NCBI RefSeq assembly: GCF_001194135.2 | Contig: NC_068984.1 | Span: 93,809,262-93,845,803, forward strand | Length of the DNA stretch: 36,542 nt | Direction: 5' to 3' | From: Octopus bimaculoides | Taxonomy: Eukaryota | Shown here: positions 168-29,011 of the stretch, one piece after another | Layout: each line of letters opens with the position of its first letter | How positions within the stretch are numbered: the stretch's first letter is position 1 | Made by a program: the position numbers and the translations under genes | Notes under the pieces: generated by a model | The model's database searches: none | Told to the model about the DNA's origin: nothing | What the model saw: only the letters and a program-made list of their open reading frames with translations

Positions 168-1629
168 AAAATCACAAGCAGGGGAGATGTTTAAAAGATT
201 TACAATAGTCTTTGAATGAAGTAAAATTAAATAGAGTAAGGTGATTTAAAACTGTTCTCAAATGAAATAAAAATAAAGCAGTTCATGAATGAAATAAAAA
301 TATAATGAAGTGAGATTGTTTCAGGGAATACGCAAAGCAAAAACTTTTCTTTCTAATTTGGTGGTCACATTTCCTTCATCAGAGATAGAATTTTTAAAGT
401 TTAGGTTTTTTTTAAGTTCAAGATTCCCTACAGGTTAAAAATTCCTCCAGTTATTCTTTAAATTAATTGAGAATAATTTTCCTTCAACACATATGTACCA
501 CTCTATCTTTAACAAATCGAGTCTGAAATTTTCTCACTCCACAGCATCAAACCTCTGATTGATTATTGCCATAAATAATATGCTTAAAATACAAAATTTG
601 ACAAATACTAATAGTAACAAAGGAAATAATAATAACGAAATGGGTGGTTTTGCAAAAAAAGTTGTGATTGTCCATCCCAAAATAATTGTCCATTAGATGG
701 TCAGTGTCTACTCAACAATGTAGCATATAAATGTGAAATGAATACTTTAAATGAAGTTAAAAAAAGTATACATTGGAAGCACTACAAATTTCAAGATTAG
801 ATATAGGGCACATATGAATTCTTTTGTTAACAAGAATACGAAAAATTCAACTGCTTTGGCCATATATATAAATAAATTAAAAGATAGTAATAGATTATAC
901 TCCCTAAAATGGTCTAACATGGGGGAGTATACTCCATATAACACCCATACAAAAACCTGTAGTCTTTGTTTGAAAGAAGCCATAAATATATTAAGAACAG
1001 ATAAAAAAACTATTGCTGAATAAGATATCCAAGGTTTTCATCTCATGTAGGCACAAGTTGCTATCAACTTACCACTTTTTTAGAAAATAAAAAAATTGGA
1101 AGAAAAAAGTGTTTTTAAATAAAATGTTTTTAAAATGCTGAGTTCCCTGATACAGATCTCCGCTCATCCTTATTCAGACATATAATTTAGTATAGATATA
1201 AATATAATCTTGTATTTCTAGTAATCATGCGACATGAAAATTTATTTTATACACACTGGACCACTTGGAATTTTCATTCTTAATTTTTCCTTTATACTCA
1301 TTCACAACTCTTCTGGCTTTTCTATATTTATTACCAAGATCACACAGCTGTTGTGGGAAAAACTCTTTTAAGAAATCTTAAACTTTAAAAAAACCTAAAC
1401 TTTAAAAATTCTATCTCTGATGAAGGAAATGTGGCTACCAAAGTAGAAAGAAAAAGTTTTTGCTTTGTGTATTCCCTGAAATGATCTCACTTCATTATAT
1501 TTTTATTTCATTCATGAACTGCTTTATTTTTATTTCATTTGAGAACAGTTTTAAATCACCTTACTCTATTTAATTTTACTTCATTCAAGGACTATTGAAA
1601 TCTTTTAATCTCTCCTGCTCATGATTTTT
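168..1629. repeat. Inverted repeat pair 168-420 / 1380-1629 (inverted pseudo-LTR)
   Basis: For example, gaatgaagtaaaattaaatagagtaaggtgatttaaaactgttctcaaatg in the left arm is the reverse complement of catttgagaacagttttaaatcaccttactctatttaattttacttcattc in the right arm. Confidence 0.9.
663..1023 (+). pseudogene. PLE GIY-YIG endonuclease domain, frameshifted
   Basis: CDCPSQNNCPLDGQCLLNNVAYKC, then after a frameshift VYIGSTTNFKIRYRAHMNSF...YSLKWS...CSLCLKEAINI. Matches the PLE CxC-CPLxGxCL / YIG / FKxRY..H pattern. Confidence 0.85.
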
Positions 1630-1761: not shown

Positions 1762-2720
1762 ATGGAGAAACAGATTCTTGGTTTATCCTTTAAAAACATC
1801 CCAATTCCTCCAAAACATGTATATATGGAAACATTATTGCAAAAGATTAATGACCTGATTAAAAGAAGGAGATGGAGAGCTTTTTATTTTGAATTGGGGA
1901 ATAAGAAATGGATCAATAGCATGAAAACTACAATCTAGAATCATACAGGAACCCTCCGCACACCCTTGAACTACTGAAATTCAAAAAGGATTTAATATTT
2001 ATGATGAAAAGGCTGAAATTCTCCAGAACAACCAATTCTTTGCAAAAAAAGACTACAGAAAATAATTTCTAATATAAAAAGCTCAGACAATCTTCATGTC
2101 TTATCTAATATAACTGGTAATCTGTTTTCTATTCTAGTTAATGTATATACTGATTTTATATGTAAAGAGTTGAATTCTAAGTATAAGATAGCACATGATA
2201 ATGATTTGAACAAGATTAATAGAGAACATTATAGACTAATAACGGACTTAAATTTACTAGATAGGATCATGCCCTATTCCCCAAAGGTCCCCCATTTCAC
2301 CTTTAAGGACCATAAGGCAAATTTTATTAGTAAACCCACGATACGTTTGATATGTCCGACTAAACTGGACTGTTGCAAAATTAGTAAATCAATCTTAGAT
2401 AGGATCCTCCCTTATGTGAAACAAAATGTGGATTTGCTTCTATGGAACAGCACTGGTGATGTAATTACATGGTTTTCTTCAACTCAAAATAAGGAGAAAA
2501 CTTATTTTATACGATTCGACATTGATAATTATTATCAGTCAGTATCTCTGAGTCTTTTAGATAAGGCATTGGCATTTGCAAATAGGTTTAAGAACAGTTC
2601 ACCTTTGGAAAGAGAGATAATCCAAAATACCAGAAAAACATTAATTTCATATAATGAAAAATATTGGACCCGGATAATTTCGATGTTACGATGGGATCCT
2701 CTGATTCTGCCCAAATCACA
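1762..2720 (+). pseudogene. PLE ORF N-terminus and reverse transcriptase, 3'-truncated, with frameshifts
   Basis: MEKQILGLSFKNIPIPPKHVYMETLLQKINDLIKRRRWRAFYF; FTFKDHKANFISKPTIRLICPTK; FIRFDIDNYYQSV; frameshifted DNFDVTMGSSDSAQIT. Ends in a (TG/TA)n tract. Confidence 0.85.
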
Positions 2721-4438
2721 TATGTGTGTATATGTGTGTGTGTACGTGTACATATATATATGCATGTATCCTTTCCTTTTCTAGTTTCTGCCTAAGAGCT
2801 GCAATCATGCTGTGCACCACCTTTTGCTTTGCTATACTTTCACTAAACCTCTTCTGATATGTGGCATTTGGTAAATGAGAGAGTTTTGATGTTGCTGCCC
2901 ACATCTGTGTCTTTTGCTGTGAGGTAGGTTCATTTGAAACTCTTGACAGGAGGGGATCCAGTTTTGTTTTTGAAGACACCTACATCCATCCTGTGGAGGT
3001 CTCCCAGGCTTTTTGGAAGGATATTGAAGAGTTGTGGGCACTTGAAACCAAAGCTGTTGCAGTACTTGGTCCTGTATCCTGATGGTAATGTTCGTATTTT
3101 TGGTACTATACAGTGGTGCCTTGTTCTGCTGTTTGTATAACTTTCAATGACCAAGTTCTAGGATTTTCCAGATGTATATCACTGCATATCTTACCCATCT
3201 TCATTATAGGGAGTAGAGTCTTAACTTTTTTAGTCTCTCCCTGTACCTGACATGTTGCATTGAGATGGTGTTCTTTGTGTAGCTTCATTGAATTACTCTG
3301 AGTCCCACTGTTAATTTTAGAGTGTATGGTGACCATTATTGGGAGCTGTAATCTAAATGGGTGAAGATGAATATCCTCATGATGACCATCATGGTTTCCT
3401 GTTCTCTCATCTTGAATGTTTTAAAAAGCCATCTAGCCAACCATCTGCATTTTATTGCCAACTTAGTAATATGCACCTGGAAAGATGCATCATTACTCAT
3501 TTCAAAGTTCTGTACCCTCTGAGAGACTTATATCATCTGTATAGCTAGCAAGGGTGGCTATTTGAGCAGCTGAAGGCATGTCTGAGAGGACCACTATAAA
3601 TAGCAGTGGCTTGAAATAGCCCCATTAGTCACTGCTATCTGACTTCTATCTTTTAGAAAATCATGTAGCCACTCTCCAAGTTTTCTGATTATGTAGCTTG
3701 TGACATATCACACTATGGTTGACATGGTTGACTTGCTAAGGATTTTGCAAAGTCAAGTTATGCTCTATCCACATTTGAATTGTTGAGCAGCTGCTTTTAC
3801 ACCCAGTTGTAGTGCTGCAAGAGCTGTGTTAGGCAACAGTCAGTAAGTCATTCTCTTCAAGGAATGCAATTAGTTTCCTTTGGAGTATTTATTCCATGAC
3901 TTTGCTGATGTGTGAGGTCAGAGGGGTACACCTATAGTTTTTAGTATCTGCTCTACTTCTAGTGTGGTCCTACCCTTTAATACATGGAGGAATTTTCCTT
4001 TTTGGCATACTTTAAGAAGGGTTTAATTTTATATTTTTTACAACCCAGGCTTCTTTGTTTACTCTTTTTCTTTCATGGTAGCATTTCAGATGTTTCTCAA
4101 TCTCCAGCAGTGTTGATTCCAGATGAGAATTTTCACTATCATTGAGTTCTCTGTTGAGACAGTTTGCAATCTTTGTACACCGTCTTGTAAGAACTTTTAT
4201 CTCCCTGGGAATCTTCTTCGTGTGCAGTGGCCTTTCTCTCTGGGACAATCTCGTAGCATATGATTTGCGTTACAGACATGAATTCTTTGAATTTCATGTT
4301 GGTGTTAGGTATTGAGACCAGTCTTGTTTGATGATCTCCTTCTCAATGGATTTCCAATATGCTTTATGGAAGTTCAGCTTGGATAGATTTTGGGTGTTTC
4401 TCATAAACTGCATGTCTGTGGGTTCCTTCGATCCATAC

Positions 4439-4575
4439 ATGTTTACAAGGGGGAGACAAGCACCTCCACCCAGCTAAGCCTGCATCCAGAGATGTGCTTG
4501 TGAGTCTTTGCTCATCAGTCTGGAGTAGTATGACCTGCTAGTTGAAGATGCCTGTCAAGCTCTTGTAAACATATA
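4439..4575 (-). repeat. Solo fragment of the HHR-bearing repeat (family 1)
   Basis: Nearly colinear with 4953-5092. Bounded by the inverted repeat ATGTTTACAAG / CTTGTAAACAT. Confidence 0.9.
4485..4524 (-). ncRNA. Degenerate type I hammerhead ribozyme (family 1, copy A)
   Basis: Minus strand reads TCCAGA-CTGATGA-gcaaagactca-caagc-acatc-TCTGGA. Helix I and CUGAUGA are intact; GAAA and helix III are damaged. Confidence 0.5.
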
Positions 4576-4838
4576 TTCTGATCTAAGACTAGCGTCGGTG
4601 TCACTTTCACATTATGGATGAGATCTATATTGTTTGTGAAGCAGTGATCAAGTACAATCGTACCTTGACTTATGAATTTAATTTGTTCCATGACAGAGCT
4701 CGTAACTCAAATTACTCGTATGTTAAATCAAATTTCCCCATTAAAATGAATTGAAATGCTATTAATCTGTTCTGGGTCCCCCAAAAAACACCACAATTTT
4801 TTTTGTTGCAATTTTTTTTTTTAAATAAGAAAAATGTA

Positions 4839-5392
4839 GTTGTATGCTGTCAACTTAATGCGACAGTCCCCTGAAGGGAATAATACTACTGTTGGTTAGA
4901 CCTAGGAAGCTGCACCGCTTCCTGTCAGCCTTGACACATTTCCTGTGTCCTTATGTTTACAAGGGGGAGACAAGCACCACCACCCAGCTAAGCCTGCATC
5001 CAGAGACATGTTTGTGAGTCTTTGCTTGTCATCAGTCTGGAGTAGCATGACCTGCTAATCGAAGATGCCTGTCAAGCTCTTGTAAACATATAATAATTCT
5101 AGTGAAATACATTCACTGATTTCAAACATAAGGACACAGGAAATGTGTCAAGGCCAACAGGAAGCAGTGCAACTTCCTAGGTCTAACCAACAGTAGTATT
5201 ATTCCCTTCAGGGGACTGTCACATTAAGTTAACAGCATACAACTACTTCATCGTATCACTACTGCATAAATCTCTCTGAGTGATTTAGAAATGTATTATT
5301 TCTAAATTTGAAATCAGTGAATGTATTTCACTAGAATTATTATATGTTTACAAGAGCTTGACAGGCATCTTCAACTAGCAGGTCATGCTACT
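4839..5392. mobile_element. HHR repeat array (family 1), left part: inverted partial monomer 4839-5126 (-), then direct monomer 5124-5392 (+)
   Basis: 5124-5248 is the reverse complement of ~4837-4959, and 5297-5391 is the reverse complement of ~5042-5126. The left TSD is aagaaaaatgta (4827-4838). Confidence 0.9.
4999..5041 (-). ncRNA. Type I hammerhead ribozyme (family 1, copy B)
   Basis: Minus strand reads TCCAGA-CTGATGA-caag caaaga ctca-CAAA-CATGT-C-TCTGGA. Helix I is 6 bp, helix III is the palindrome ACATGT, and the cleavage triplet is GUC. G12 is replaced by C. Confidence 0.65.
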
Positions 5393-5605
5393 TCTGTTTT
5401 GTTGCTACTTCCACATTTAGTGAGTTATTTCTGTCTATTATTATTGTTACTTTTATGTTGATAATTATTGATACTTGTTTTACGTTAATTTGCGCTCTGC
5501 GGGGCAAAAATTGTTTTTTCTGCTCTCTTTGTAAAGAAATTGCGAACTGTTTTTCTGTGTTCCGGTGAAAGGAAAATTTATTTTCTTATCAACAAAACTT
5601 TCAAT

Positions 5606-6971
5606 ATGGAGGATGAAATGGCGATGCGCCTAGATTTTTTATTGTGTAATGAGGACTTCCCAATTCTACAAGAAGAAAATGTACAAGTATTACAAGGTAT
5701 ACAAGGTAACCAACAAGTAACCCAGGAAATTAAAAAGGTGAACAGTTTTTCTGCCGCTGTTGGCAGACAATTTGAAGAGATTGAAGTATTACCTGAACAG
5801 TTGTTCAAATATAGAAATTTAATAAAGCAGACCGACAATGAAACAGAAACCATACAAGAGTTGGCGGTAAAAACTGTTATATATAAAGTATACAACCGCA
5901 AGGAGAAACGGATAATGATGATGAAGACAGATACAATTGAAAAGTGCCTTGCCCCTGTGTGGGAAAAAATCAAATATGTAGGAAGAAGGCCACAAAATGC
6001 TACAGTAGAGGCTCAATTTGAAAACGCCGAAGTAGCAAAGGAGATATCAATGCTAACTCTAAAGACGAACAGGATAATGTTATTACCCACGTACTTTGAC
6101 CGGAGAATTACAATAGAGGATATTCCGGCCGAGTATGACGTGTATTGGATGGTAGCAGCACTAATATACGATGTGGAAGAACAAGTCAGATGCACTCAAT
6201 TGGAAGGGGCAAACTCTAGAACTCTTAGTCTAAGCTTCCAATGAAATCCTAGAAACCAGACCAGACAGGATTTTCATAGGGGAGGGACTCAGTGCAAGAG
6301 TGTCGGTGGAGGGACGGAGGCCCAGATGTTTCAAATGTGGTGAAAAGGGCCACGTCTGCTCCGAATGCGAGAAAGTAAAAAAAACCGACACAAAAAAAAA
6401 AGTAGAAGTCCCTCCCCAAAAGGAGGAAAAAATACCAGACAAATCTCAACAGAAAAAAGATGACAACCAAGGAAAAAAGAAAATGCCGGAAAACACAATA
6501 GAAAAAGAAAAAAGCGAAGAAGAAATGGAGTTCCAAGTAGTATCAAATAAAAGGAAAAGACCCCTTAGCCCAGACTCCCCTCCCCCTTCAAGAAAAAAAT
6601 ACAAAACGCAAAACACAAAAAAAATACCCCCGCCACTCCCAAATTGAAACCCGCCCCTAAACCTCCACAAGAAAGAATTGTTTCGTACAATTCGAAAAAT
6701 GAAGTGTTACACGGATTAATTACGAAAAAAAAACTATACGGTGTTGGGACCTATTGTAGGTAAACCGCCACACATATGGTTGGCAAGGATCAGTGTAGAA
6801 CATTATGAACAGTTCAAACAATGATATACAGAAGATATCTATGACATGAGTGAGTTTATCGTAAAAGAAAAAATTGTACTAACACCAATGGCTACACCAG
6901 TCATAGACGATACAGGAGGAGGGGACGATGAAAGTCGTGAAGCCCCTCCTGCAAATTTAAAGGTAAATTAA
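5606..6971 (+). pseudogene. Tx1/L1 ORF1 (gag-like), broken by a stop and frameshifts
   Basis: MEDEMAMRLDF...; stop at 6242-6244; RCFKCGEKGHVCSEC zinc knuckle; K/E-rich linker and FQVVSNKRKR basic motif; probable frameshifted tail ending at TAA 6969-6971. Confidence 0.75.
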
Positions 6972-7185
6972 CTGCTTTTTATCATGGAAGTTAAGTTAGG
7001 GTGTATAAATGTACGTGGCCTGGGGTCAAAATGGAAGCAGACATGCCTCCTAGACGACCTCAGGTCGTGAAAGATAGATATATGCGTTGTGACTGAGTCC
7101 AAGCTGAATNNNNNNNNNNNNNNNNNNNNNNNNNNNNNNNNNNNNNNNNNNNNNNNNNNNNNNNNNNNNNNNNNNNCTTTTTATC

Positions 7186-10100
7186 ATGGAAGTTAAGTTA
7201 GGGTGTATAAATGTACGTGGCCTGGGGTCAAAATGGAAGCAGACATGCCTCCTAGACGACCTCAGGTCGTGAAAGATAGATATATGCGTTGTGACTGAGT
7301 CCAAGCTGAATGGCCCACTGTCGTTCTCGCCTCTTCTGAACGACTACGAGAAATTTATTTCTCCGAGTCAAGGAAGGAGTGGGGGCGTTGTGGTACTGTT
7401 CAAAAAAAGCTTGGACGTACAGGTAAGTACAGTCTTTCTAGACCCAGAAGGTAGGTTGGTCATTCTAGATGTGACACACATGAGTAAGCAGTCTTTCAGG
7501 TTAGTAGCACTCTATGCTTCACAAGAGAATAGACAGATGGTTTTCTTTCGAGACTTGGAAAATTTTCTAGTGACATCAAAAACTTTAGTTTTAACAGGAG
7601 ACTTTAACACTATTCTCAACGTGCGAGCGGATGGTGGTGACTCGACCAACAGAAGAGAAAGCCCTGGCCTAAAAAGGTTACTAGCAAGCTATAAACTAGT
7701 AGACCGCTACAGACTAGATGAACCGCTCATTCCACAGTGGACGTGGTCTAATAGCGATGGTTCACAAAGGTCTTACTTAGATAGGGTTATTATAAAAGAT
7801 AGTGATAGAGATATAGTTAGTTGTCCACAATTTCACTGTACCTCTTACACGGATCACAAATTTGTGACGTGTGAAATACAGTTAGCTAAGTGTCATAGAC
7901 AGGGACGCGGTTACTGGAAGATGAACAAGTCTATTTTGACTAGTGAAGTCTTCCGTGCTCGGGTTAAGGAGTTAGTGCAGAGGGCATTATGCGGAGCCAT
8001 CGTTAATAACAGATGGTGGTGCACCCTCAAAAGAGCCATACGTTTAGAGGGATCTAGAGTAGAAGGACAATTAACTAAGGAGTTAGAGGAGGCCATAGCA
8101 TCAGGCTCTGCATTCAGAGTGTTGGCGGCGAGATCAGTGTTATTCCGTCACCTCCAAGCCAAACACGAAGGTAGTAGAGTCAGGGCTAAGTTACGCACGG
8201 TAGGCAGAGAAGGTATTAACGTTGCCGGATGGGCCCGTCATGTGGAGAGTCGGAGAGGCAGAGAAGCTGCTGTACAGTCTTTAATTGACGAACAGGGGTG
8301 CCGGATCGAAGGACAGGAGGAGATGCAGAAGGCCTTTCATCAGNNNNNNNNNNNNNNNNNNNNNNNNNNNNNNNNNNNNNNNNNNNNNNNNNNNNNNNNN
8401 NNNNNNNNNNNNNNNNNNNNNNNNNNNNNNNNNNNNNNNNNNNNNNNNNNNNNNNNNNNNNNNNNNNNNNNNNNNNNNNNNNNNNNNNNNNNNNNNNNNN
8501 NNNNNNNNNNNNNNNNNNNNNNNNNNNNNNNNNNNNNNNNNNNNNNNNNNNNNNNNNNNNNNNNNNNNNNNNNNNNNNNNNNNNNNNNNNNNNNNNNNNN
8601 NNNNNNNNNNNNNNNNNNNNNNNNNNNNNNNNNNNNNNNNNNNNNNNNNNNNNNNNNNNNNNNNNNNNNNNNNNNNNNNNNNNNNNNNNNNNNNNNNNNN
8701 NNNNNNNNNNNNNNNNNNNNNNNNNNNNNNNNNNNNNNNNNNNNNNNNNNNNNNNNNNNNNNNNNNNNNNNNNNNNNNNNNNNNNNNNNNNNNNNNNNNN
8801 NNNNNNNNNNNNNNNNNNNNNNNNNNNNNNNNNNNNNNNNNNNNNNNNNNNNNNNNNNNNNNNNNNNNNNNNNNNNNNNNNNNNNNNNNNNNNNNNNNNN
8901 NNNNNNNNNNNNNNNNNNNNNNNNNNNNNNNNNNNNNNNNNNNNNNNNNNNNNNNNNNNNNNNNNNNNNNNNNNNNNNNNNNNNNNNNNCGATCCAGGAC
9001 AATCATCATCTCTTACACTACACCTTAGACAGGGTGGGTAAAGTTTCCGGTAAAGGTGGGGCATTGGTCCATTTAGACCAAAGTAAGGCCTTTGATAGGG
9101 TTGACCATCGGTACCTGGCAGCAGTCCTTGAGGCGGCTGGGCTAGGCCCGGATTTCCGCAGTTGGATCAAGGCCATTTATGGTGGCATCAAATCCGCGGT
9201 TCAGTTGAACGGTTAGCTGTCGGAGCCGTTCGAGATCAGGTGTTCAGTCCATCAAGGGTGCCCCCTGTCTCCGCTTCTGTATGTACTGTCTCATGAGCCA
9301 TTGCTGCGGAAGTTGGAGAAGTTGGAAAGCACCACTAATGAAATTGGATGTGGTAAAGGTGTCTCGGCGTATGCGAATGACGTCACCATCACAGTATCAA
9401 AGATGACTCAGCTACCTCGCATAGCAGAGGCAATCAGAAGATACGAGACGGTGGCAGGGGCAAAAGTTTACAAAGACAAGTCTGTTGGTTTGCGACTCGG
9501 CACCTGGAGCAGCAAGCCGATAACATCCAGTGTTGTAGGACACTGGACGGATGGTCCTGTTAAGTTGCTTGGAGTTTGGTTTGGTCCGGACTCCCAGATG
9601 GAGAAAAATTGGAGTGAGGTGATGGACAGGGTAGAAGCACTAACCCGGACCTGGTCCAGTAGGGCGCTGTCTCTGAAAGGAAGGGCGGAGGTGGTGCAGA
9701 CGTTTATTGCGTCAGTTATCACCTACCGCCTGACCGTCGTCCCTTGCCCCGATTTGTGGCTAAATAAGCTGGTTCAGATTCTCTTCCGCTTTTNNNNNNN
9801 NNNNNNNNNNNNNNNNNNNNNNNNNNNNNNNNNNNNNNNNNNNNNNNNNNNNNNNNNNNNNNNNNNNNNNNNNNNNNNNNNNNNNNNNNNNNNNNNNNNN
9901 NNNNNNNNNNNNNNNNNNNNNNNNNNNNNNNNNNNNNNNNNNNNNNNNNNNNNNNNNNNNNNNNNNNNNNNNNNNNNNNNNNNNNNNNNNNNNNNNNNNN
10001 NNNNNNNNNNNNNNNNNNNNNNNNNNNNNNNNNNNNNNNNNNNNNNNNNNNNNNNNNNNNNNNNNNNNNNNNNNNNNNNNNNNNNNNNNNNNNNNNNNNN

Positions 10101-10684
10101 NNAGGGCGGGGTATTTGGATAATTACCAAAGATCCCTGACTTGGCAGTGTTTCAGGAATGCGTTACCTGTCCACAAGAAATTGTCCAGGCACGGGATTTC
10201 AGTGCCACCCGAATGTCCAAGATGCGGGCAGGAGAAGGAAACTATCCTGCACGCTCTTGTTCAGTGCACCCATCTTTCGGACATGACAGTTTATGTTGAA
10301 CACATGCTGTCACACCTAGGAAGAGTACAGCTATCGGCTGAGTCTGTGATTAAGAATGCACCGCCCACCGGACTACCTAAGGAAGGTGAGGCTTGTTTTC
10401 TATGTACAGTCACAGTTATGAAAGAGTGTGCATGGAGAACTCGAATGCAAGGTATGAAGACAGGAACCTTCATCTCCGGCTCTGGAATGCTGTACTATTT
10501 CAGATATCACCTGAAAAGCAAGATAGGGCTGGAGAGAAGGCACCTGTCTAGAATAGTATATGAGGAAAGATGGAAGAAAGTTAGGAGTGAGTGGCCCTAC
10601 TTAATCTTTCCAGATAAAAATCCAAAGGTGAAGACTGGTGTACCTGAAATTAAGTGTAAACTAATGGAAATATTCCAAGTTTAA
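7186..10684 (+). pseudogene. Tx1/L1 ORF2 (APE endonuclease, RT, zinc finger) with in-frame stops and two N gaps
   Basis: LGCINVRGL, TGDFNTIL, SYLDRVII, YTDHKFV, GYWKMNKSIL, LDQSKAFDRVDH, QGCPLSPLLY, YAND (YADD mutated, 9370-9381) and CPRCGQEKETILHALVQC. Stops at TGA 7270-7272 and TAG 9214-9216. Confidence 0.92.
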
Positions 10685-10821
10685 AAATTTTTTAATATAT
10701 TTTTAACATATTTTCTTTAAAAAAATTTTTTAAATGACTCACTAAATGACAATTCTTAAATGTCTGTAGTGTCCTGTATTGTCCCCTCTATGTAAAATAT
10801 ATTTATCGTAATAAAGAGAAT

Positions 10822-11089
10822 AGGTCATGCTACTCCAGACTGATGACGAGCAAAGACACAGAAACATGTCTCTGGATGCAGGCTTAGTTGGGTGGAGGTG
10901 CTTGTAAACATTAGGGCACAGGAAATGTGTCAAGGCCGACAGGAAGCGGTGCAGCTTCCTAGGTCTAACCAACAATAGTATTATTCCCTTCAAGGGACTG
11001 TTACATTAAGTTGACAGCATACAACTACTTCATTGTATCACTACTGCATAAATCTCTCTCAGAGATTTAGAAATGTATTATTTCTAAAA
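10822..11089 (+). mobile_element. HHR repeat array (family 1), right part, continuing the monomer interrupted by Tx1
   Basis: Resumes ggtcatgctactccagactgatga. 10906-11086 repeats 5124-5296. The right TSD is aagaaaaacgta (11090-11101), one mismatch from the left copy. Confidence 0.9.
10834..10876 (+). ncRNA. Type I hammerhead ribozyme (family 1, copy C; best core)
   Basis: TCCAGA (10834-10839), CTGATGA (10840-10846), cgag caaaga caca, GAAA (10861-10864), CATGT, C (10870), TCTGGA (10871-10876). The GUC site predicts cleavage after 10870. Helix II is weak in this copy. Confidence 0.75.
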
Positions 11090-11199
11090 AAGAAAAACGT
11101 ACTTTTAAATAACAAATATTGTATTAAAAAGCAATACAATAGAATCTATCACAATGAACTGTTTTTTTAAGTATAATGTACAGCATTTACCTTGGAAAT

Positions 11200-12867
11200 C
11201 AGACGACTTGTTAATACTGATGGAGGTTGAGGAGAAAGGCTAAACTGAATTACTGAATATTATGAATCAATGTTATAGTTGTCCTTCCAGAACTCTCGAA
11301 GGGTGAGGTATGTGCTCTCCGACACCTCAAAGCAGTAGCAGAACAGGTGCTTGGTGAAGAGCTTCTTGAAATTAGAAATCTCCTGCTGGTCCATGAGCTG
11401 CAGGATAGGGGTGGTGTTGGGTGGAAGGTGGAGAACCTTTGTAAACTTGAATGAGGATGTCATTTTCGAGGTTAGGTGGGTGACCAAGTACATTGTCCAG
11501 AACATGAAGGGCTTGCAAGGGTAGGTTATTTTCCTGGATATATGTCTTAATGTCAGGATGAAAGACCAAATTCATCCACTCCACAAAGAACTGCCTGATG
11601 ACCCACGTCCTTGGATTTGCCCTCCACATAACCTGCAGCTTTTCTTTCAGAATCTTATGTGACTTGAATGCTCTGAGGTTTTCCAAATGATAAACGAGCA
11701 GCGGCTTAATCTTGACGCACAGTGCAAGGGTTAGCCTATCTTTCATGGGTTTGACTTGGCATCCTCTTCTCCTCTGCCATTATATAAGTCCTCCTTGGCA
11801 TCTTCTTCCAAAAAAGTCCTGTCTTGCAACATTTCAAGACTTGGTGGGGGATGTATCCTTCGGCTGCTATAATTCTGGCAAAAGTTTTGAGGTAGGCACA
11901 GGAGTGGCTGTGTGGTAAGTAGCTTGCTTACCAACCACATGGTTCTAGGTTCAGTCCCACTGCGTGGCACCTTGGGCAAGTGTCTTCTACTATAGCCTCA
12001 GGCTNNNNNNNNNNNNNNNNNNNNNNNNNNNNNNNNNNNNNNNNNNNNNNNNNNNNNNNNNNNNNNNNNNNNNNNNNNNNNNNNNNNNNNNNNNNNNNNN
12101 NNNNNNNNNNNNNNNNNNNNNNNNNNNNNNNNNTGTGTGTGTGTATATGTTTGTGTGTCTGTGTTTGTCCCCCCAACTTCGCTTGACAACCGATGCTGGT
12201 GTGTTTACGTCCCCTTAACTTAGCGGTTTGGCAAAAAAGATTGATAGAATAAGTACTAGGCTTACAAAGAATAAGTCCTGGGGTCGATTTGCTCGACTAA
12301 AGGCAGTGCTCCAGCATGGCTGCAGTCAAATGACTGAAACAAGTAAAAGAGTAAAGAGTAATCCTCAACTGTCTTCATATCCGCTCTCACTGCCTCACCA
12401 TGCCTGATAAGGGGGTGAATGCCGGTCTTCTTTTTAAAATTCTCGAACCAGCCCTGACAGGGTTTTAAATGGCTCATCCAATGCCTCTTATGTACAAGTG
12501 CCTGGGGTCTGCTGCAGCAAATCAGTGTAAATAGCTCGTGCCTTCTCGCCGATTATAGCCTCCATCACAGTATCTCCTGCAAGCTGACATCTGTCAACCA
12601 CACCATCAGCAGCTTCCCCATATTTTCATGGATAGATGTCCGCTGTTTAGAAATTATTTCAATGTCCTTGGCTGTCATTATAGCCTTTATCGACTCCTTC
12701 TGCTTCAGTATGGTGCAAATCGTAGAAGTACTACACTCGTACTACTTTGCCATGTCAACTACATACACACCTTGGTCATGTTTTCCAAGAATTTCTTTCT
12801 TTAATTCCATGCACATCATCCGCTTCTTCTCACCACTGTCCTTCACACTCACTTTCTTCGGACCCAT
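11200..12867 (-). pseudogene. Tigger/TIGD1-like transposase (CENP-B HTH plus DDE), decayed and split by a SINE
   Basis: MGPKKVSVKD...MELKKEILGKHDQGV; KPCQGWFENFKKKTGIH; MKDRLTLALC; WRANPRTWV; LDNVLGHP; LPPNTTPILQLMDQQEISNFKKL. Confidence 0.9.
11895..12360 (+). mobile_element. tRNA-derived SINE (family A) inserted in Tigger
   Basis: A-box-like TGGCTGTGTGG and B-box-like GGTTCAGTCCC, internal (TG)n, tail cagcatggctgcagtcaaatgactgaaacaagtaaaagag. Homologous to 20895-21210 and 28215-28601. Confidence 0.85.
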
Positions 12868-13789: not shown

Positions 13790-15480
13790 CTCTGTATATT
13801 TTGGACGTGATATAAAAGTCTTTGATAAAATCAACCTTATGTCACAAACTGTATAATCTTAGCATAGTCAGAAAACTTGGAAAATGGCTACATGACTTTC
13901 TAAAAGATAGAAGTTAGGCAGTGATAACCAATGGAGCCTACTCTAAGGAGACACAAATGGTGAGTGGTGTTTCACAGGGCACTGTCTTAGAGCCACTGCT
14001 ATTCATAGCGGCCCACTCAGACATACCCTCAGCTGCTCAGATAGTCATCCTTGATGATACAAAAGTCCGACACCTCAAAGCAGTAGCAGAACAGGTGCTT
14101 GGTGAAGAGCTTCTTGAAATTAGAAATCTCCTGCTGGTCCATGAGCTGCAGGATAGGGGTGGTGTTGGGTGGAAGGTAGAGAACCTTTGTAAGCTTGAAT
14201 GAGGATACAGAACCATGGAGATGTTGCACATCTGCAACAGGGGTTGCATGCAATATACAGGTAGGCTGAGGAAAATAGCATGCAGTTAAGTGCTGGAAAA
14301 TTCCAAGCCCTGTGCTAGCAACACATGAAGCTGAATGAAATGCATATATGGATACACTGGCGCAGGAGGGATTGCAATCCCCTAATCAGAAAGCCATGAT
14401 GGTCCTCTGGAAGACATTTATCCTCAACTGATGAGATTACTACTCCCAACTGTGGTCACCACATAGTGTAAAATTAATGGTAGAATTTGAAAGCAATCCA
14501 GTGGACCCACACAAAGAAAATTGTCTCAATGCAACATATCAGCTATTGGGAAAGGCTACAAAATTAAGTTTCTACCAAAGCCAGGAAAGATATACAGTGA
14601 TATACATCTGGAAAATCTTGGGAGGATTTGTACCAAACTTCGGCATTGAAAGTTACATAAACAGTAGAACAGGGCACCATTGCATAGTACTGTAGTGATT
14701 ATTCTCCAAGGCAGAATTTGGGATCCATGTTGGTTGGTCACCAATTTATGTGGTGATTATATATAGTCAGTACCAGGCGTTGATGTGGCTGTGTGTATAT
14801 TATTATATGAACATATAGAGATGAAGAATAAATTCAAGAACTATATATTTACTACATAAAAATATATTTTATTTACTGTTGATGATGATACATAATCAAA
14901 ATGTAGAATCTAATTGAATGAAGTAATCTATGCAAGAAAGTTCAGAGATAGGAAATATAGAAATAACAGCTAAGTGGTAACTTTCAGTCATGTGGCATAG
15001 AGAAATAAACGGACATAGCAATGACGTGAATGGCTCTAAGTCTAATCAACTAAGAAGCAAGGAGCAGGGTTAGCAAGCTGATTTTATCAATGGAACGCTA
15101 GACATTCTAGAAACTTCCAAGAAAAATGCTAAGCTTCTTGAATAATTAAGAATCATGTCTCATGACACAGATGCTTCAAGAAACTTAGTAAAGAGAGATT
15201 ACTTTATATTCTCTCTTGCAAGAGAGATCATTCAACTATCTAGCTACCACTACAGTACTAAAGATCCCAACATTGCCATCAAGATACAGAACTAAGTACT
15301 GCAACAGCTTGGGTTTCACAGGGCCACAACTCTCCAATATCATTCCAAAAAGCCTGGGTCACCTGCATGGTGTGGATGTAGGTAAAACAAAACTGGATCT
15401 CCTCCTGTCAAGGATTCCAGATGAGCCTACCTCATGGCAGGAAATGCAGACGAGAGTAGCAGTCAAAAACAAAAATGGGA
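13790..15480 (+). mobile_element. Second CR1-like LINE fragment (RT to 3' end), interrupted at 14066-14206 and 14691-15254
   Basis: GKWLHDFLKDR, VSGVSQGTVLEPLLFI, DDTKV, EENSMQLSAGKFQAL and RYRTKYCNSLGFTGPQLSNIIPKSL. Same family as 2790-4437. Confidence 0.8.
14691..15254. mobile_element. Probable solo LTR (Gypsy-like termini)
   Basis: Begins TGTAGTG and ends CACTACA, flanked by a GTAC 4-bp direct repeat (14687-14690 / 15255-15258). Removal restores the CR1 sequence catagtactaaag. An alternative reading is a TA-TSD MITE with 8-bp TIRs. Confidence 0.6.
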
Positions 15481-18469: not shown

Positions 18470-20694
18470 CATGTAAAGATGATGTTGTAGCAATTTTTTT
18501 TCTTTTTTTACTTACTATATCCTTAGAAATTAAATAAATGAAATAACAAATCTGTTTCTATATCATGTCTTTTCATACACACGTTGCCTAAAAGGGAGCC
18601 TGCTTCTTCTTCTTTATCAAAACTTTATCACTATCATAACATCTGCTAACAACAATACAATAATAGTGGTTCATGTGACTGAAATGTTCTAAACAGTGAC
18701 AGTCAGCTTGGTGTATAAGTAACCATTTACCTATACTTCATATAAAATCACAAACTGTCTAGTCAAGTGAAATTTATAATTATTTTATACCCATACCAAT
18801 ATGCAACCACCAGCAAAAAGAAGAAAATTGAAAGTTATAGCAGTAGCCAAAGTTCGAACAATTGTGCTGGTGCTAGAACATTCAGTGTTACTGAGAAGAT
18901 GGTACAAGAGTTGAGAAAGAATGAGGAAAAATTAACAGATGCAAAAATAAAAATGTGTTATGAGAAGAAGCATTCATTGGCTGAAGTTGGAAAATGGGTA
19001 CTCCAACAGAGACAAGTTGGCTACATTGTAAAATAGAAAAATATCTTATGCCCTAAATCATATAAAGAAGAAAGTAAAAATTTTAAAGCAACAGTAGGCT
19101 GGTGCAATTGTTTTATGAACAGAAAATATCTGGTAATAAGGGAGAAAACAAAAATCACCCATAAACTTCCAAGAGATCTTGATCACAAAGTAACCATTTT
19201 TCACCAGTTCATCTTCAAACTGAGAAAAAGGCATCAGTTTCCATTGTTTTATATTGGAAATATGGATGAAACTTCATTAAACTTTGATATGCTGGGTAAC
19301 AAAATGGTAGATTTGAAGGGAGTAAAAACAGTACATGTTAAAATCACAGGATATGAGAAAATGAGGATTATGGTGGTATTATCATGCATGGCCGAGAGTA
19401 CAAAATTAAAACCCATGGTTATTTTTAAATGTAAAACAAAGCCCAAAATAGATTTTCCTCCTGGCGTTTTTGTTCATTTTCACAAGAAAGGATGGATGGG
19501 CGAGACTGGTGTGAAATTATGGATTGAGAATATTTGGAACAGGTGGCAGTGGCATATGAAACGTACGCAGTTTATTGGTTTAAGATATGCTTTGTAGCCA
19601 CGTAACAGCAAATACTAAAACCCAGTTATCCAAAACCAATACTGATATGCTGTTATTCCTGGTAGTTTGACTTCTATACAGCAGCCACTTGATGTCAGTT
19701 TAAACAAACCATTTAAAGATAATGTGAGAGAGCAATGGAATGACTGAATGATGAGTGGAGAAAAATCTTTTACAAATGGTGGAGTTATGTGTGCTGTCTC
19801 AGTTGATGTTCTCTGTGATTTTGTTATAAAGGCATGTGACAAAGTTAAAGTAGAAAATGTGGTAAAATTACTTTTAAAAATACGGTATCTCTAATGCCAT
19901 GGATGGTACCGAAGATGATATTCTGTACAATAGTGACAACGAAGTCAAAATCGATTCAGCAGAACCAGACTGGAATCCTTATGATGATGGCATATGTGAT
20001 GAATCTTGTAATATGTATGAGAAACTTTTATAAACATGTATTGATGATTGTGAGGAATTTGATGGGTTTTTAGATAAATACATGTGGCAGGTTTGATGTT
20101 TTATTAATATTATTTAACTTGATAAGAAATTTTTAAAAAATTATAATGTCTTATGTTTCAATTGCAACTACACTGTAAAATAATTTTATTGCAAAATATA
20201 GGTTGTGTGTAATCCAAATTGTGTTATTTACCACCAAATGATAATAGATATTTTATGAAAAATATAAATATGTTATTCTAAATGTTATTATTACAGTTGT
20301 ACATTACCATTAAAATTTTTGGAAGGTTAGCAAAAGATAAAGGTTACTGTAAGTGCAATGATGACTCGATGTTTACATTTTCTCTGCCAAGCTTGCATAG
20401 ATAAAAGTTGATTTCAATTAAATAGAATTATATCTCGAACAGGCTATTTATTATGAAGATATGCCAAATATATATAAAGTAAAAATGTTTTTATTACCTA
20501 TATTATAATTTTTTCTTATTTTGTTAATCTGTTCATGTATGTCTATGTTTATCGCACCGAGGTTGAGGTTAGCCTATTTATAAAATCACTTAAAATTCAA
20601 AGTTTGATATTTAGAATGGTTGTATAAGACAACCCCAAATTTTTAGGGTAAATTTTAGGATTTAAAGGTTGCCTTATATGTGGAAATATATATA
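18470..20694 (+). mobile_element. pogo-family DNA transposon (POGK-like transposase), decayed; left end lies in an N gap
   Basis: SNNCAGARTFSVTEKMV (Brinker-like), FKATVGWCNCFMNR, IGNMDETSL, KLKPMVIFK, KGWM, VIPGSLTSIQQPLDVSLNKPFKDNVREQW. TIR-like right end ggttgccttatatgtggaaatata. Confidence 0.8.
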
Positions 20695-20970: not shown

Positions 20971-21039
<69 letters not shown>

Positions 21040-21210
21040 TTGTGTGTCTGTGTTTGTCCTCCTAGCATTGCTTAACAACCGATGCTGGTGTGTTTATGTC
21101 CCCGTCACTTAGCGGTTCGGCAAAAAGAGACCGATAGAATAAAGACTAGGCTTCCAAAGAATAAGTCCCGGGGTCGATTTACTCGACTAAAGGCGGTGCT
21201 CCAGCATGGG
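20895..21210 (+). mobile_element. tRNA-derived SINE (family A); head lies in the N gap
   Basis: cttctactatagcctcgggccaaccaaagccttgtgagtggatttggtagacggaaac...ggcggtgctccagcatgg, homologous to 11895-12360. Confidence 0.85.
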
Positions 21211-21804
21211 AGCGGGTAAAAGGGGGGAGTTTTCAACTTTCAAAACACGGTAGATAGCGTTGATGCCAGGAACCGCGTACGTAGTAGAATGCCTGTGTAT
21301 ACATACTTGTATATGTATACATGTGAGTGAGGGGATATCTGAGTATGGTTATGCACATGGACTCATATATATGTATTGGAGTGTCTATAGCTATTTGTAT
21401 GACCTCATGTACTGTTTGTAGGCTTTTTATGTGCCTTATATTTTTATGTTTTTATATATTTTTATATTTTCTATGTTATACTTTTATTTTTCATTTATTT
21501 ATTTTTATTATTATTTTTTTCTTGCTGTACCCTTATTTTTATTTTCATTTTTATCTTTATTTTTATTTTTGTTTTTGTTTCTATTTCACCTTTGTTTTTA
21601 CCTCTTACTCTATATTTGTATGAAATTCTTTGTGAATCTCTGAAGAGTACTAGCGAATCGTGCATGTACCCCCATTTCAGCATTTCATCCGATAATCACT
21701 CCAGCAGGAACTATTCGGATAGAATGGGGCATGCCAAAGCTAGGCCAAAACAGCTGTAAGATTAAACTTTTGTTCATTCTCTAATTCCTTATGTACTTTG
21801 TACT

Positions 21805-24150: not shown

Positions 24151-24922
24151 AAAAACAGTAGGTATCTTGTTAATATACTTATACTGCATAGTTAATCAAA
24201 TCATATTTCCATAGTATTCCTGATTCATATCCTAATTCACCATAAAATTAGATAACCAACCTGTATCAAATTGCTTAATTATTAGGAATATGACAGATAA
24301 ATTGCAATCATTTTACTTTAAACATTACTTATAAAACTCTTATATTTATGGATTTTATATTTTGATCTTTAAAAATAAGTTTAAAAAGAGAAAAAACTGA
24401 TTTCTAATATAACAGATACCATAATGTGATGATATGCCTTGGAAATTTGGTCTTCATTCACAGTAGAAACCATCATTTTTAATTTCTTAACACTTTGGGA
24501 ACAAAATAAAGAATACAAAATCCTATTTACACATACTTTATAGCACAAAGCCCTAAAATTCATCAAGGTAGTGCCCCAGCATGACCACGGTCTAATGACT
24601 GAAACAAGTGAAAGAAGATAGAAAGATTATTGTGTATGAACTGGATACTATAATATATTGGTAATTTTTTAATGAGAATATGTTCATTGAAGTATTGAAG
24701 TTATCTTTGATAAAAATATATCACATCTTTCTAGTTTCTTACTCTAAAACATATTCAATTTCTTGTAATAAAAAAAAAAACAATTGTAACTGTAGTCTGA
24801 TGCTGATTCTTGCTTGAAGCAATTTCACTTTTTTGGTGCTAAAATTTTGGGAAAGGACCTACCATAACATCACCTCTATATTCCCCTCCTTTTAGTTTCA
24901 AGGTGCCATGTAAAATTAAGAA

Positions 24923-28959: not shown

Positions 28960-29011
28960 TCTGTTGGCTCATTACCTCCTAAAAATATTTTTAAGAGGTC
29001 ATGGGCTAACA

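What the first reader, a model, noticed from the sequence alone, without database searches (positions are those of the whole stretch)
4839..11089. ~340-350 nt hammerhead-ribozyme repeat (retrozyme-like) arranged as an inverted plus head-to-tail array
Seen: after removing the Tx1 LINE, 5124-5392 plus 10835-11086 read as about 1.5 head-to-tail monomers. The sequence ...tatttctaaa runs straight into tttgaaatcagtg... at 5296/5297, and aaacataagg recurs after 340 nt. Each monomer holds TCCAGA-CTGATGA-helix II-(G/C)AAA-CATGT-C-TCTGGA, with a 6-bp helix I conserved in all three copies, a palindromic helix III (ACATGT) and a GUC site. The monomer is non-coding and full of hairpins: TATGTTTACAAG/CTTGTAAACATA enclosing the ribozyme, AGGAAGC/GCTTCCT, GACACA/TGTGTC, TTTAGAAAT/ATTTCTAAA and AGTGAA/TTCACT. 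Known: minimal type I HHRs with palindromic helix III act as dimers in Penelope-like elements and in metazoan non-LTR retrozymes, whose short tandem monomers are cut out and circularised. Inference: this is a retrozyme-like family able to give ~350-nt circular RNAs; I do not know of it being described in cephalopods. Caveats: only copy C keeps GAAA, and helix II pairs poorly in each copy (an ancestral CGAG/CTCG lost by CpG decay is a guess). It could instead be a solo or tandem pseudo-LTR of a PLE.
Basis: partly seen in the sequence, partly recalled or inferred. Interest (0 to 1): 0.9.

Follow-up and report, generated by a model that had tools for sequence, protein, structure and literature searches.

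The report
Decayed hammerhead-ribozyme retroelement repeat, LINE-interrupted
This is an old, mutated insertion of a short non-coding mobile element carrying a relic of a self-cutting hammerhead RNA, a known kind of animal element (retrozyme, dependent on Penelope-like elements), later split by a LINE; it is not a working ribozyme locus.

Summary
A 340-nt non-coding unit occurs as an inverted copy (A, 4839-5126, minus) plus 1.54 direct units (B 5124-5306; C 5307-5392 + 10835-11088). C is split by an L1/Tx1-like LINE with a 13-bp target duplication. A fourth partial copy (A', 4439-4575) lies outside the stated range.

Undoing one inversion gives a contiguous 2.36-unit tandem flanked by a 12-nt duplication. 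That is the architecture of Penelope-like-element insertions.

The hammerhead motif is more than chance. A covariance model built only from four published retrozyme hammerheads ranks the three copies first in the window (25.7, 17.7 and 10.2 bits; background 9.5 or less).

No copy looks functional. Helix II pairs at 2 of 4 positions. The catalytic G12 is present only in copy C, and the outgroup copy suggests that G may be secondary. Rfam hammerhead models give no hit. No covariation can be measured from three copies. The direct array carries only one hammerhead, so the locus cannot release a circle.

Genome-wide copies could not be obtained, so the family consensus, the decisive test, remains open. 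Verdict: a decayed new member of a known kind, of modest interest.

The parts
4439..4575 (-). Copy A': a solo 137-nt piece (unit positions 35-174). It corresponds exactly to the long hairpin domain bounded by ATGTTTACAAG / CTTGTAAACAT. It carries the most decayed hammerhead-like motif, at 4485-4524.
   Evidence: (D15, D16), 40, 56 for the extent; 10.2 bits, E=0.88, within background. The left edge abuts the 5' end of a decayed LINE at 2893-4438.
4827..4838 (.). Left target-site duplication of the whole composite, AAGAAAAATGTA. Its last 3 nt, GTA, overlap the element end as microhomology.
   Evidence: 15/17 match to 11085-11101, placed directly at both ends. Only 2 of 2000 random 25-mer pairs from the window reach the same score.
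4839..5126 (-). Copy A, inverted: unit positions 1-288. Hammerhead-like motif at 4999-5041 with CAAA in place of GAAA.
   Evidence: (I3, I4, I7, I10); 17.7 bits, E=0.0055.
5124..5306 (+). Copy B: 5'-truncated direct copy (unit positions 167-340) with no hammerhead. It joins A head-to-head through an AAA microhomology at 5124-5126.
   Evidence: (D5).
5307..5392 (+). Copy C, first 86 nt (unit 1-86). It ends in the LINE target duplication AGGTCATGCTACT (5380-5392).
5393..10821 (+). Secondary insertion of a decayed L1/Tx1-like LINE. It has ORF1 with a CCHC knuckle, then an ORF2 with endonuclease, RT and zf-RVT domains. It contains three N gaps and at least two in-frame stops. It is not part of the repeat.
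   Evidence: Pfam: zf-CCHC, Exo_endo_phos, RVT_1, zf-RVT. (stops; gap 1 flanked by identical 135-nt copies). (13-bp duplication).
10822..10834 (+). Second copy of the LINE target-site duplication, AGGTCATGCTACT. Its last T is the first base of hammerhead helix I.
10835..11088 (+). Copy C, remaining 254 nt (unit 87-340).
10834..10876 (+). The best-preserved hammerhead-like motif:
- helix I 10834-10839 / 10871-10876
- CUGAUGA 10840-10846
- helix II plus loop 2 10847-10860 (CGAG-CAAAGA-CACA, only 2 of 4 pairs)
- GAAA 10861-10864
- palindromic helix III ACAUGU 10864-10869
- predicted cut after C10870
   Evidence: strict pattern, 0 expected. (25.7 bits, E=2.5e-5, full model length). (helix I 100%, helix II 50%, helix III 100% paired; no covariation). 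(no Rfam hammerhead hit).
11090..11101 (.). Right target-site duplication of the composite, AAGAAAAACGTA. It differs from the left copy by one CpG/TpG transition.

Best explanation
What it is. The locus is one old insertion of a short (340-351 nt), non-coding, non-autonomous retroelement of the animal 'non-LTR retrozyme' type, probably mobilised by Penelope-like-element machinery. It carries a canonical type I hammerhead at the tip of a 137-nt hairpin.

Inferred history.
1. A tandem, hammerhead-sense RNA of at least 2.36 units (about 800 nt) was reverse-transcribed at a staggered break. The template was either a multimeric transcript or a rolling-circle copy of a circle.
2. One part of the cDNA was inverted during integration, as in twin priming.
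3. A 12-nt target duplication resulted.
4. The copies then decayed by about 5-7% from each other, partly through CpG loss.
5. An L1/Tx1-like LINE inserted just 5' of helix I of copy C.

Function. In an active master, the hammerhead, with its minimal palindromic helix III, would cut multimeric RNA as a dimer and yield unit-length RNA able to circularise. This follows from the published behaviour of the newt/axolotl and PLE ribozymes. The three copies here are fossils and are not expected to cleave.

Shown: the copies, both target duplications, the inversion geometry, the similarity of the motif to published retrozyme hammerheads, and the strand-specific hairpin.
Inferred: PLE dependence, the RNA template, the ancestral activity, and circles.
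For: 1. Copies and period.
2. Inversion geometry: the inner end of A (unit position 1, at 5126) and the right end of C (unit position 340, at 11088) are adjacent nucleotides of the tandem. A single inversion breakpoint therefore restores a contiguous array of unit 167-340, 1-340, 1-288.
3. A 12-17-nt duplication sits exactly at both ends.
4. This matches the PLE insertion pattern of partial tandem plus adjacent inverted copy, optional tail and variable duplication length (PMC8557442).
5. Model R1, built only from coral, mussel and two axolotl retrozyme hammerheads (PMC7229834 Suppl. Table 2), ranks the three copies 1-3 in the whole window (25.7, 17.7, 10.2 bits; next 9.5). In control DNA it gave at most 14 bits in about 50 kb of non-animal metagenome loci. 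It also found a textbook hammerhead (33 bits) in an unrelated animal contig.
6. Descriptor simulation: 3 relaxed and 0 strict hits in 60 Mb.
7. The 137-nt domain folds 9.6-10.3 kcal/mol better on the hammerhead strand than on the antisense strand in all three copies, with 6-8 G.U pairs against 3. In either integration model the RNA template is the hammerhead-sense strand.
8. Non-coding: the longest stop-free frame is 62 aa, and a six-frame pseudo-protein query found no homologue. GC is 38-47% across the four pieces.
9. A 340-nt period with no ORF means the full element is 340 nt long, which a 5'-truncated coding PLE would not give.
Against: - No Rfam hammerhead family matches, either at gathering score or at E<=10, even on an 86-nt slice.
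- G12 is C in A and A'. Helix II is 50% paired. There are no compensatory changes, and helix I never varies, so it says nothing.
- The hammerhead segment is, if anything, more variable than the rest of the unit: 6 variable columns in 43, against 19 in about 308.
- With A' as outgroup, parsimony puts C at position 12 in the source. The GAAA in copy C could therefore be a later chance change.
- Only three motif copies, from two insertion events, were available.
- No autonomous PLE with a related end was found. The PLE-like coding remnants at 751-2781 gave no R1 match above 7.4 bits.
- The exact coincidence of A' with the hairpin domain is not explained by this model.
Confidence: 0.62

Rival explanations
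1. The repeats are pseudo-LTR material of an autonomous Penelope-like element, a solo or rearranged pLTR, rather than an independent short element. The hammerhead is the ordinary pLTR ribozyme.
For: - All canonical PLEs carry hammerheads in their pLTRs, and their insertions show tandem plus inverted copies (PMC4209133; PMC8557442).
- A 2026 preprint finds pLTRs and retrozymes to be phylogenetically close.
- PLE-like coding remnants (GIY-YIG 751-1020, RT-like 2170-2781) lie 2-4 kb away.
Against: - The tandem period is 340 nt with no ORF. In a PLE the repeated unit is the whole multi-kb element, so 2.36 consecutive 340-nt units are not what a 5'-truncated PLE leaves.
- The only coding sequence between the copies is an unrelated LINE with its own duplication.
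- The ribozyme has the canonical retrozyme layout (6-bp helix I, 4-bp helix II, helix III present). The PLE 'min-HHR' layout instead has a long helix II and a bulged base after A9.
- The nearby PLE-like remnants gave no R1 match above 7.4 bits and no similarity to the unit.
Confidence: 0.15
2. The hammerhead resemblance is a coincidence, or the ribozyme was already inactive (C12) in the source. On this reading the unit is an ordinary SINE-like or satellite repeat. Alternatively, the 137-nt hairpin is a MITE-like DNA element with 11-bp terminal inverted repeats that was captured in a longer unit and also occurs solo as A'.
For: - No Rfam hit.
- 2 of 3 copies lack G12. Helix II is unpaired in all copies. 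There is no covariation.
- Parsimony with A' favours an ancestral C12.
- A' ends exactly at the two arms ATGTTTACAAG / CTTGTAAACAT. In A and B the hairpin is flanked by TA...TA.
- The simulated rate of about 0.05 hits per Mb for the relaxed descriptor would give on the order of a hundred chance hits in a genome of a few Gb.
Against: - R1 scores of 25.7 and 17.7 bits over the full model, with E-values of 2.5e-5 and 0.0055 for the window.
- Features not demanded by the descriptor also fit: the 14-nt helix II/loop spacing, a CAAAGA loop 2 close to the axolotl CAAAAA, a GAAACAUGUC string identical to Ax330, and helix I continuing through an internal loop into a closing stem.
- The hairpin is strand-asymmetric because of G.U pairs, as expected for an RNA rather than a DNA palindrome.
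- The motif sits in an element with retrotransposon-type integration: a 12-nt duplication and a twin-priming-like inversion. This is not a cut-and-paste TA insertion.
- There is no tRNA-like part.
Confidence: 0.2

Closest known systems
Metazoan non-LTR retrozymes (Cervera & de la Pena 2020, PMC7229834; coral, mussel, axolotl)
   Same: - Short non-coding unit of 340-351 nt; published retrozymes are about 170-400 nt.
- GC below 50%.
- Type I hammerhead with a 6-bp helix I, a 4-bp helix II layout and a minimal palindromic helix III.
- Head-to-tail copies.
- Target duplication longer than 4 bp.
- A model built from their ribozymes detects the copies here.
   Different: - Only 2.36 units, one part inverted.
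- The ribozyme cores are mutated.
- No sequence similarity to the mussel, coral or axolotl units outside the ribozyme.
- No expression or circle data.
Axolotl HHR_Amex1 / newt satellite 2 hammerhead (PMC7229834)
   Same: - The helix III and cleavage-site string GAAACAUGUC is identical to the Ax330 construct.
- The A-rich 6-nt loop 2 is similar (CAAAGA against CAAAAA).
- The paper states that such ribozymes cleave efficiently only as dimers.
   Different: - Helix II here is CGAG/CACA or CAAG/CUCA and is not paired.
- The base pair next to the core is C.A in all copies. The axolotl Amex2 type also has a mismatch (U.U) at that position, but its remaining three pairs are intact.
Penelope-like element insertions and their pLTR min-hammerheads (PMC4209133, PMC8557442)
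   Same: - Partial tandem plus adjacent inverted copy.
- Variable-length target duplication.
- The ribozyme is expected to act in a tandem, dimeric context.
   Different: - No RT/GIY-YIG ORF in the unit.
- The ribozyme is of the canonical type, not the min-HHR type (long helix II, bulged base after A9, no helix III).
L1 5' inversions by twin priming
   Same: One retrotransposition event yields a direct 3' part and an inverted 5' part between one pair of target duplications, joined at a short microhomology (AAA here).
   Different: That mechanism was described for an APE-type LINE endonuclease with poly(A) priming. Here there is no poly(A), and the enzyme is presumed to be a PLE GIY-YIG/RT.

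Membership tests
Hammerhead ribozyme, type I (canonical metazoan) | Core box CUGANGA (positions 3-9) | tested here: met
   CTGATGA is present in all three copies.
Hammerhead ribozyme, type I (canonical metazoan) | Core box G12-A13-A14 followed by A15.1 | tested here: inconclusive
   GAAA only in copy C (10861-10864). A has CAAA and A' has CAAG. Outgroup parsimony favours C at position 12.
Hammerhead ribozyme, type I (canonical metazoan) | Helix I flanking the core, with the cleavage triplet N-U-H directly before its 3' strand | tested here: met
   The 6-bp helix UCCAGA/UCUGGA is 100% paired in 3 of 3 copies. The triplet is GUC in C and A, and AUC in A'. The helix is invariant, so it gives no covariation evidence.
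Hammerhead ribozyme, type I (canonical metazoan) | Helix II of at least 3-4 bp, including the 10.1-11.1 pair next to the core | tested here: not met
   50% of cells are paired. Position 10.1-11.1 is C.A in both copies that have letters there. An ancestral CGAG/CUCG lost by CpG decay is possible, since 7 of 25 variable columns are CpG-type and CpG o/e is about 0.2. It is not observed.
Hammerhead ribozyme, type I (canonical metazoan) | Short helix III with a palindromic loop (dimer-forming) | tested here: met
   ACAUGU in C and A, identical to axolotl Ax330. It is lost in A'.
Hammerhead ribozyme, type I (canonical metazoan) | Match to curated covariance models (Rfam hammerhead families) | tested here: not met
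   No hammerhead family at gathering score, nor at E<=10 on 8 kb or on 86 nt.
Hammerhead ribozyme, type I (canonical metazoan) | Match to a model built from experimentally studied retrozyme hammerheads | tested here: met
   R1 scores: C 25.7 bits (E=2.5e-5), A 17.7 bits (E=0.0055), A' 10.2 bits (not significant). Window background is at most 9.5 bits. Non-animal control DNA scored at most 14 bits.
Hammerhead ribozyme, type I (canonical metazoan) | Self-cleavage | not testable with these tools
   Needs in vitro transcription of monomer and dimer constructs.
Metazoan non-LTR retrozyme | Short (about 170-400 nt) non-coding unit with GC below 50% | tested here: met
   340/351 nt. GC is 38-47% across the four pieces. 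Longest stop-free frame is 62 aa. No protein homologue.
Metazoan non-LTR retrozyme | Head-to-tail array in which each unit carries a hammerhead on the same strand | tested here: inconclusive
   As assembled, there are 1.54 direct units with one hammerhead, plus an inverted 0.85 unit with one. Undoing one inversion gives 2.36 contiguous units with two hammerheads.
Metazoan non-LTR retrozyme | Target-site duplication longer than the 4 bp of plant LTR retrozymes | tested here: met
   12 nt, AAGAAAAA(T/C)GTA.
Metazoan non-LTR retrozyme | Dispersed multicopy family expressed as unit-length circular RNA | not testable with these tools
   No host genome or RNA data could be reached. All routes tried failed.
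Autonomous Penelope-like element (pLTR) | RT plus GIY-YIG ORF between or next to the repeats | tested here: not met
   Between the copies there is only an L1/Tx1-like LINE with its own duplication. The PLE-like remnants at 751-2781 are unrelated in sequence to the unit.
Autonomous Penelope-like element (pLTR) | Insertion architecture: partial tandem, adjacent inverted copy, variable-length duplication | tested here: met
   compared with the description in PMC8557442.
MITE (for the 137-nt hairpin / A') | Terminal inverted repeats flanked by a short fixed duplication such as TA | tested here: inconclusive
   11-bp arms ATGTTTACAAG / CTTGTAAACAT. Flanks are TA...TA in A and B, TA...TT in C and TA...TG in A'. 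Two bases in AT-rich DNA are not significant.

The most novel reading that the evidence does not exclude
Its intact newt-type hammerhead (GAAACAUGUC, dimer-dependent) would produce abundant circular RNAs. That would be a first for this lineage. A Tx1-type LINE may also preferentially target the repeat next to helix I.
Probability: 0.2. Interest if true: 0.5.

Novelty: new member of a known kind. Interest (0 to 1): 0.3.

Why it matters
If the family proves to have intact members elsewhere in the genome, it would extend hammerhead-bearing circular-RNA retroelements to another animal lineage. It would also add a clean example of PLE-type integration, a tandem template with an inverted part, for a 340-nt non-autonomous element.

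As it stands, the locus is a neutral fossil. It mainly serves as a seed sequence for a genome-wide search. In the held library I found no paper describing hammerheads or retrozymes in cephalopods. An Octopus vulgaris repeat annotation lists active Penelope and L1-Tx1 families without mentioning ribozymes.

Tried and rejected
- Rfam at gathering score, and at E<=10 on 8 kb and on 86 nt: no hammerhead family. The only weak hits were C/D-box snoRNA models, triggered by the UGAUGA box. There is no D box before the terminal stem, so these were rejected.
- Collecting more copies, all without result:
  - A 17-mer scan of metagenome contigs gave 39 hits. All were chance or part of a coding retrotransposon of one sample.
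  - 20-mer scans of viral contigs and of GTDB genome contigs gave none.
  - A concatenated six-frame pseudo-protein of the unit, searched against 5.8 billion proteins, gave none.
  - LINE C-terminus homologues gave one Logan cluster at 59% identity on contigs under 2 kb, with no repeat.
  - pogo transposase homologues led to another animal's contigs, about 73% identical in the transposon only, with no repeat.
  - Exact look-up of three window ORFs found none in the collection.
- tRNA-derived SINE: no tRNA found.
- Homology of the unit to published mussel, coral and axolotl retrozymes: none outside the ribozyme.
- Full-text search for the ribozyme sequence string: only unrelated primer matches.
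- Target specificity of the LINE: the only other related LINE piece in the window (about 31900-33100, minus strand) is 70% identical over 238 nt and is not next to a repeat. This is uninformative.
- Covariation: with three sequences there is none to measure. In the long stem, 3 of 5 differences keep pairing through G.U, which is about what transitions alone would give.


Full report
**Observation**

Reading the sequence and running repeat, BLAST and alignment analyses confirm one repeat family with a 340-nt unit. The unit is 351 nt in the variant that keeps an 11-nt CTCCCCCTTGT segment, which copy C lost between CTTGT direct repeats. The pieces are:
- A' 4439-4575 (minus; unit 35-174)
- A 4836/4839-5126 (minus; unit 1-288)
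- B 5124-5306 (plus; unit 167-340)
- C 5307-5392 + 10835-11088 (plus; unit 1-340)

Pairwise identities are 93-95%, and no further copy exists in the window.

The ...atttctaaa|tttgaaatcag junction is at 5306/5307, not 5296/5297. The unit ends at 11088, not 11086. The third ribozyme copy (A') lies outside the stated range.

**Gaps and the LINE (tested first, as asked)**

All three N runs lie inside the inserted LINE, and none touches the repeat.
- Gap 7110-7176 is bracketed by two identical 135-nt stretches (6975-7109 = 7177-7311). This is an unmerged overlap, an assembly artefact.
- Across 8344-8989 the frame is nominally kept. Across 9794-10102 it changes from frame 1 to frame 2. Gap lengths are only estimates, so neither is informative.

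The LINE has ORF1 with a CCHC knuckle and an ORF2 with an Exo_endo_phos endonuclease, RVT_1 and zf-RVT, in the canonical order on one strand. It has in-frame stops in the endonuclease N-terminus and at 9214 in the RT, so it is a dead copy.

An exact 13-bp duplication, AGGTCATGCTACT, sits at 5380-5392 and 10822-10834. The rejoined flanks align to copy A without a gap. Removing the LINE is therefore justified. I could not test whether it belongs to the Tx1 clade specifically.

**Architecture**

The composite 4839-11088 is bounded by AAGAAAAATGTA (4827-4838) and AAGAAAAACGTA (11090-11101). These differ by one CpG/TpG transition. Only 2 of 2000 random 25-mer pairs from the window match as well.

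The inner end of the inverted copy A (unit position 1, at 5126) and the right end of C (unit position 340, at 11088) are neighbouring nucleotides of the tandem. Undoing one inversion therefore restores a contiguous array of unit 167-340, 1-340, 1-288. That is about 800 nt, or 2.36 units, carrying two ribozymes 340 nt apart. The A/B junction shares an AAA microhomology.

This is the pattern described for Penelope-like-element (PLE) insertions: a partial tandem, an adjacent inverted copy, an optional short 'tail' and a variable duplication length (PMC8557442). It also resembles twin-priming inversions of L1, which I cite from my own knowledge. In either orientation of the model, the RNA template is the ribozyme-sense strand.

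A 340-nt period with no ORF means the whole element is 340 nt long. That fits a non-autonomous element rather than a truncated coding PLE. The longest stop-free frame is 62 aa, and a six-frame pseudo-protein query found no homologue.

**Is the hammerhead real?**

For:
- The strict pattern occurs once in the window, against 0.00 expected in 100 shuffles.
- A relaxed descriptor asks for a 6-bp helix I, CTGATGA, 8-20 nt, NAAA, then 2-10 nt ending in U-H, then the complementary helix I arm. It gave 3 hits in 60 Mb of simulated sequence, and 0 when GAAA was required.
- I took four retrozyme hammerheads from Supplementary Table 2 of PMC7229834 (coral Amil224, mussel Mg353, axolotl Ax353 and Ax330). 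I aligned them and built a covariance model without any window sequence.
- Searched over the whole window with filters off, that model's three best hits are exactly the three copies. C scores 25.7 bits (E=2.5e-5), A 17.7 bits (E=0.0055) and A' 10.2 bits (E=0.88). The next hit scores 9.5 bits.
- In controls, about 50 kb of non-animal metagenome loci reached at most 14 bits. Two contigs of an unrelated animal yielded a textbook hammerhead (33 bits) and a decayed one (25.3 bits). The model is therefore sensitive and reasonably specific.
- The layout is the canonical metazoan one: 6-bp helix I, 4+6+4 nt for helix II and loop 2, and GAAACAUGUC identical to axolotl Ax330. That paper reports such ribozymes as efficient only as dimers.
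- The motif sits at the tip of a 137-nt hairpin. The hairpin is 9.6-10.3 kcal/mol more stable on the ribozyme strand than on the antisense strand in all three copies, with 6-8 G.U pairs against 3.

Against:
- No Rfam hammerhead family matches, even at E<=10 on 86 nt.
- Helix II is 50% paired, and position 10.1-11.1 is C.A.
- G12, the general base, is C in A and A'. With A' as outgroup, parsimony puts C12 and U11.3 in the source, so the GAAA of copy C may be secondary.
- Helix I never varies and there is no compensatory change, so there is no covariation evidence.
- The ribozyme segment is not more conserved than the rest: 6 variable columns in 43, against 19 in about 308.
- CpG decay is real here: 7 of 25 variable columns are CpG-type, and CpG o/e is about 0.2 in the unit and 0.35 in the window.

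**What the locus can do now**

The direct array (B + C) contains a single ribozyme. The other two are on the opposite strand, 517 nt apart, and both lack G12. The locus cannot release a unit-length RNA by double self-cleavage. It is a fossil, not a retrozyme 'gene'.

**Interpretation**

The most likely reading (about 0.6) is a decayed insertion of a short, non-autonomous, hammerhead-bearing retroelement of the metazoan non-LTR retrozyme kind. It would have been integrated by PLE-type machinery from a multimeric or rolling-circle template and later hit by a LINE.

Rivals:
- pLTR material of a coding PLE (about 0.15). The 340-nt period, the absence of an ORF and the canonical rather than 'min-HHR' layout argue against it.
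- A chance or already-dead motif in an ordinary repeat, possibly with the 137-nt hairpin being a MITE-like module (about 0.2). The exact coincidence of A' with the hairpin and the C12 parsimony argument favour it. The model scores, the strand-asymmetric RNA fold and the retrotransposon-type integration argue against it.

**Comparison with known systems**

It works like, and most resembles, the retrozymes of PMC7229834 and the newt/axolotl dimeric hammerhead. Membership of 'hammerhead ribozyme' is only partly met:
- Met: core box 1, helix I, helix III and the cleavage triplet.
- Not met: helix II and the Rfam models.
- Met in one copy only: G12.

The unit has no sequence similarity to the mussel, coral or axolotl units outside the ribozyme, so it would be a new family of a known kind.

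In the held literature I found no description of hammerheads or retrozymes in cephalopods. An Octopus vulgaris repeat annotation reports active Penelope and L1-Tx1 families but mentions no ribozymes. I could not verify that the window is from a cephalopod.

**What failed**

Every route to more genomic copies failed:
- metagenome, viral and prokaryote-genome k-mer scans
- the pseudo-ORF protein search
- LINE and pogo homologues followed to their contigs
- exact look-ups of window ORFs

**Verdict**

This is a new member of a known kind, present here only as inactive relics, and of modest interest (0.3).

Noticed in passing
window 5380-5392 / 10822-10834 and LINE 5393-10821: The L1/Tx1-like LINE inserted exactly at the 5' edge of hammerhead helix I, with a 13-bp duplication AGGTCATGCTACT and no poly(A) tail; it ends ...AATAAAGAGAAT. 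Tx1-clade LINEs are often target-specific (my own knowledge), so the repeat might be a preferred target. The only other related LINE fragment in the window (about 31900-33100, minus strand, 70% identical over 238 nt) is not next to a repeat.
   Followed up: partly
window 6975-7109 and 7177-7311: Two 100% identical 135-nt stretches bracket the 67-N gap. They contain the start of LINE ORF2. This is an unmerged contig overlap, an assembly artefact.
   Followed up: yes
window 4439-4575: The solo copy A' begins and ends exactly at the two arms (ATGTTTACAAG / CTTGTAAACAT) of the 137-nt hairpin that carries the ribozyme. This looks as if the hairpin were a module of its own. Its left edge abuts the truncated 5' end of a decayed LINE. 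It remains unexplained.
   Followed up: partly
window 200-430 / 1369-1600, 751-1020 (+), 2170-2781 (+): PLE-like coding remnants. A weak, below-threshold GIY-YIG match (E=0.0012, 19.5 bits against a 22.6-bit cut-off) in the ORF at 751-1020, which lies between roughly 230-nt inverted repeats that are 90-97% complementary. There is also an RT-N-terminus-like ORF (FTFKDHKANF...RLICPTK) with no Pfam hit. The endonuclease lying upstream of the RT would suggest a Naiad-type PLE. The retrozyme-hammerhead model R1 scored nothing above 7.4 bits in this stretch.
   Followed up: partly
window 2893-4438 (-) and 13863-15461 (+): Two diverged (71-88% identical), oppositely oriented fragments of another LINE family with RT motifs. 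Both are decayed, with many stops.
   Followed up: partly
window 11260-12480 (-), 14029-14253 (-), 19115-19597 (+): pogo/Tigger-like DDE_1 transposase remnants. Stretches 11318-11458 and 14066-14206 are 99% identical direct repeats.
   Followed up: partly
window 23185-24150 (+): An apparently intact, intronless 321-aa ORF of the HlyIII/PAQR family (Pfam E=8e-37), probably a host membrane progestin/adipoQ-type receptor gene. The exact sequence is not in the protein collection.
   Followed up: partly
window 12134-12357, 21023-21220, 24565-24622, 28209-28437: Four or more copies (81-88% identical, both orientations) of a SINE-like repeat containing ...GGGGTCGATTTGCTCGACTAAAGGC.GTGCTCCAGCATGG.... 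Several copies lie next to microsatellites or N gaps.
   Followed up: no
window 28870-29103: A 117-nt-arm inverted repeat with no spacer (86% complementary), forming a long palindrome.
   Followed up: no
L044 15202-15248 (+) and L045 2886-2923 (+) (ENA ERZ25067582 contigs): These contigs were fetched only as controls. They come from an unidentified AT-rich animal genome deposited as a metagenome assembly. One holds a textbook type I hammerhead (AAUAUAC-CUGAUGA-GGUCU..AGACC-GAAAC-AGGCCU-GUA-GUAUAUU, 33 bits). The other holds a decayed one (25.3 bits).
   Followed up: partly
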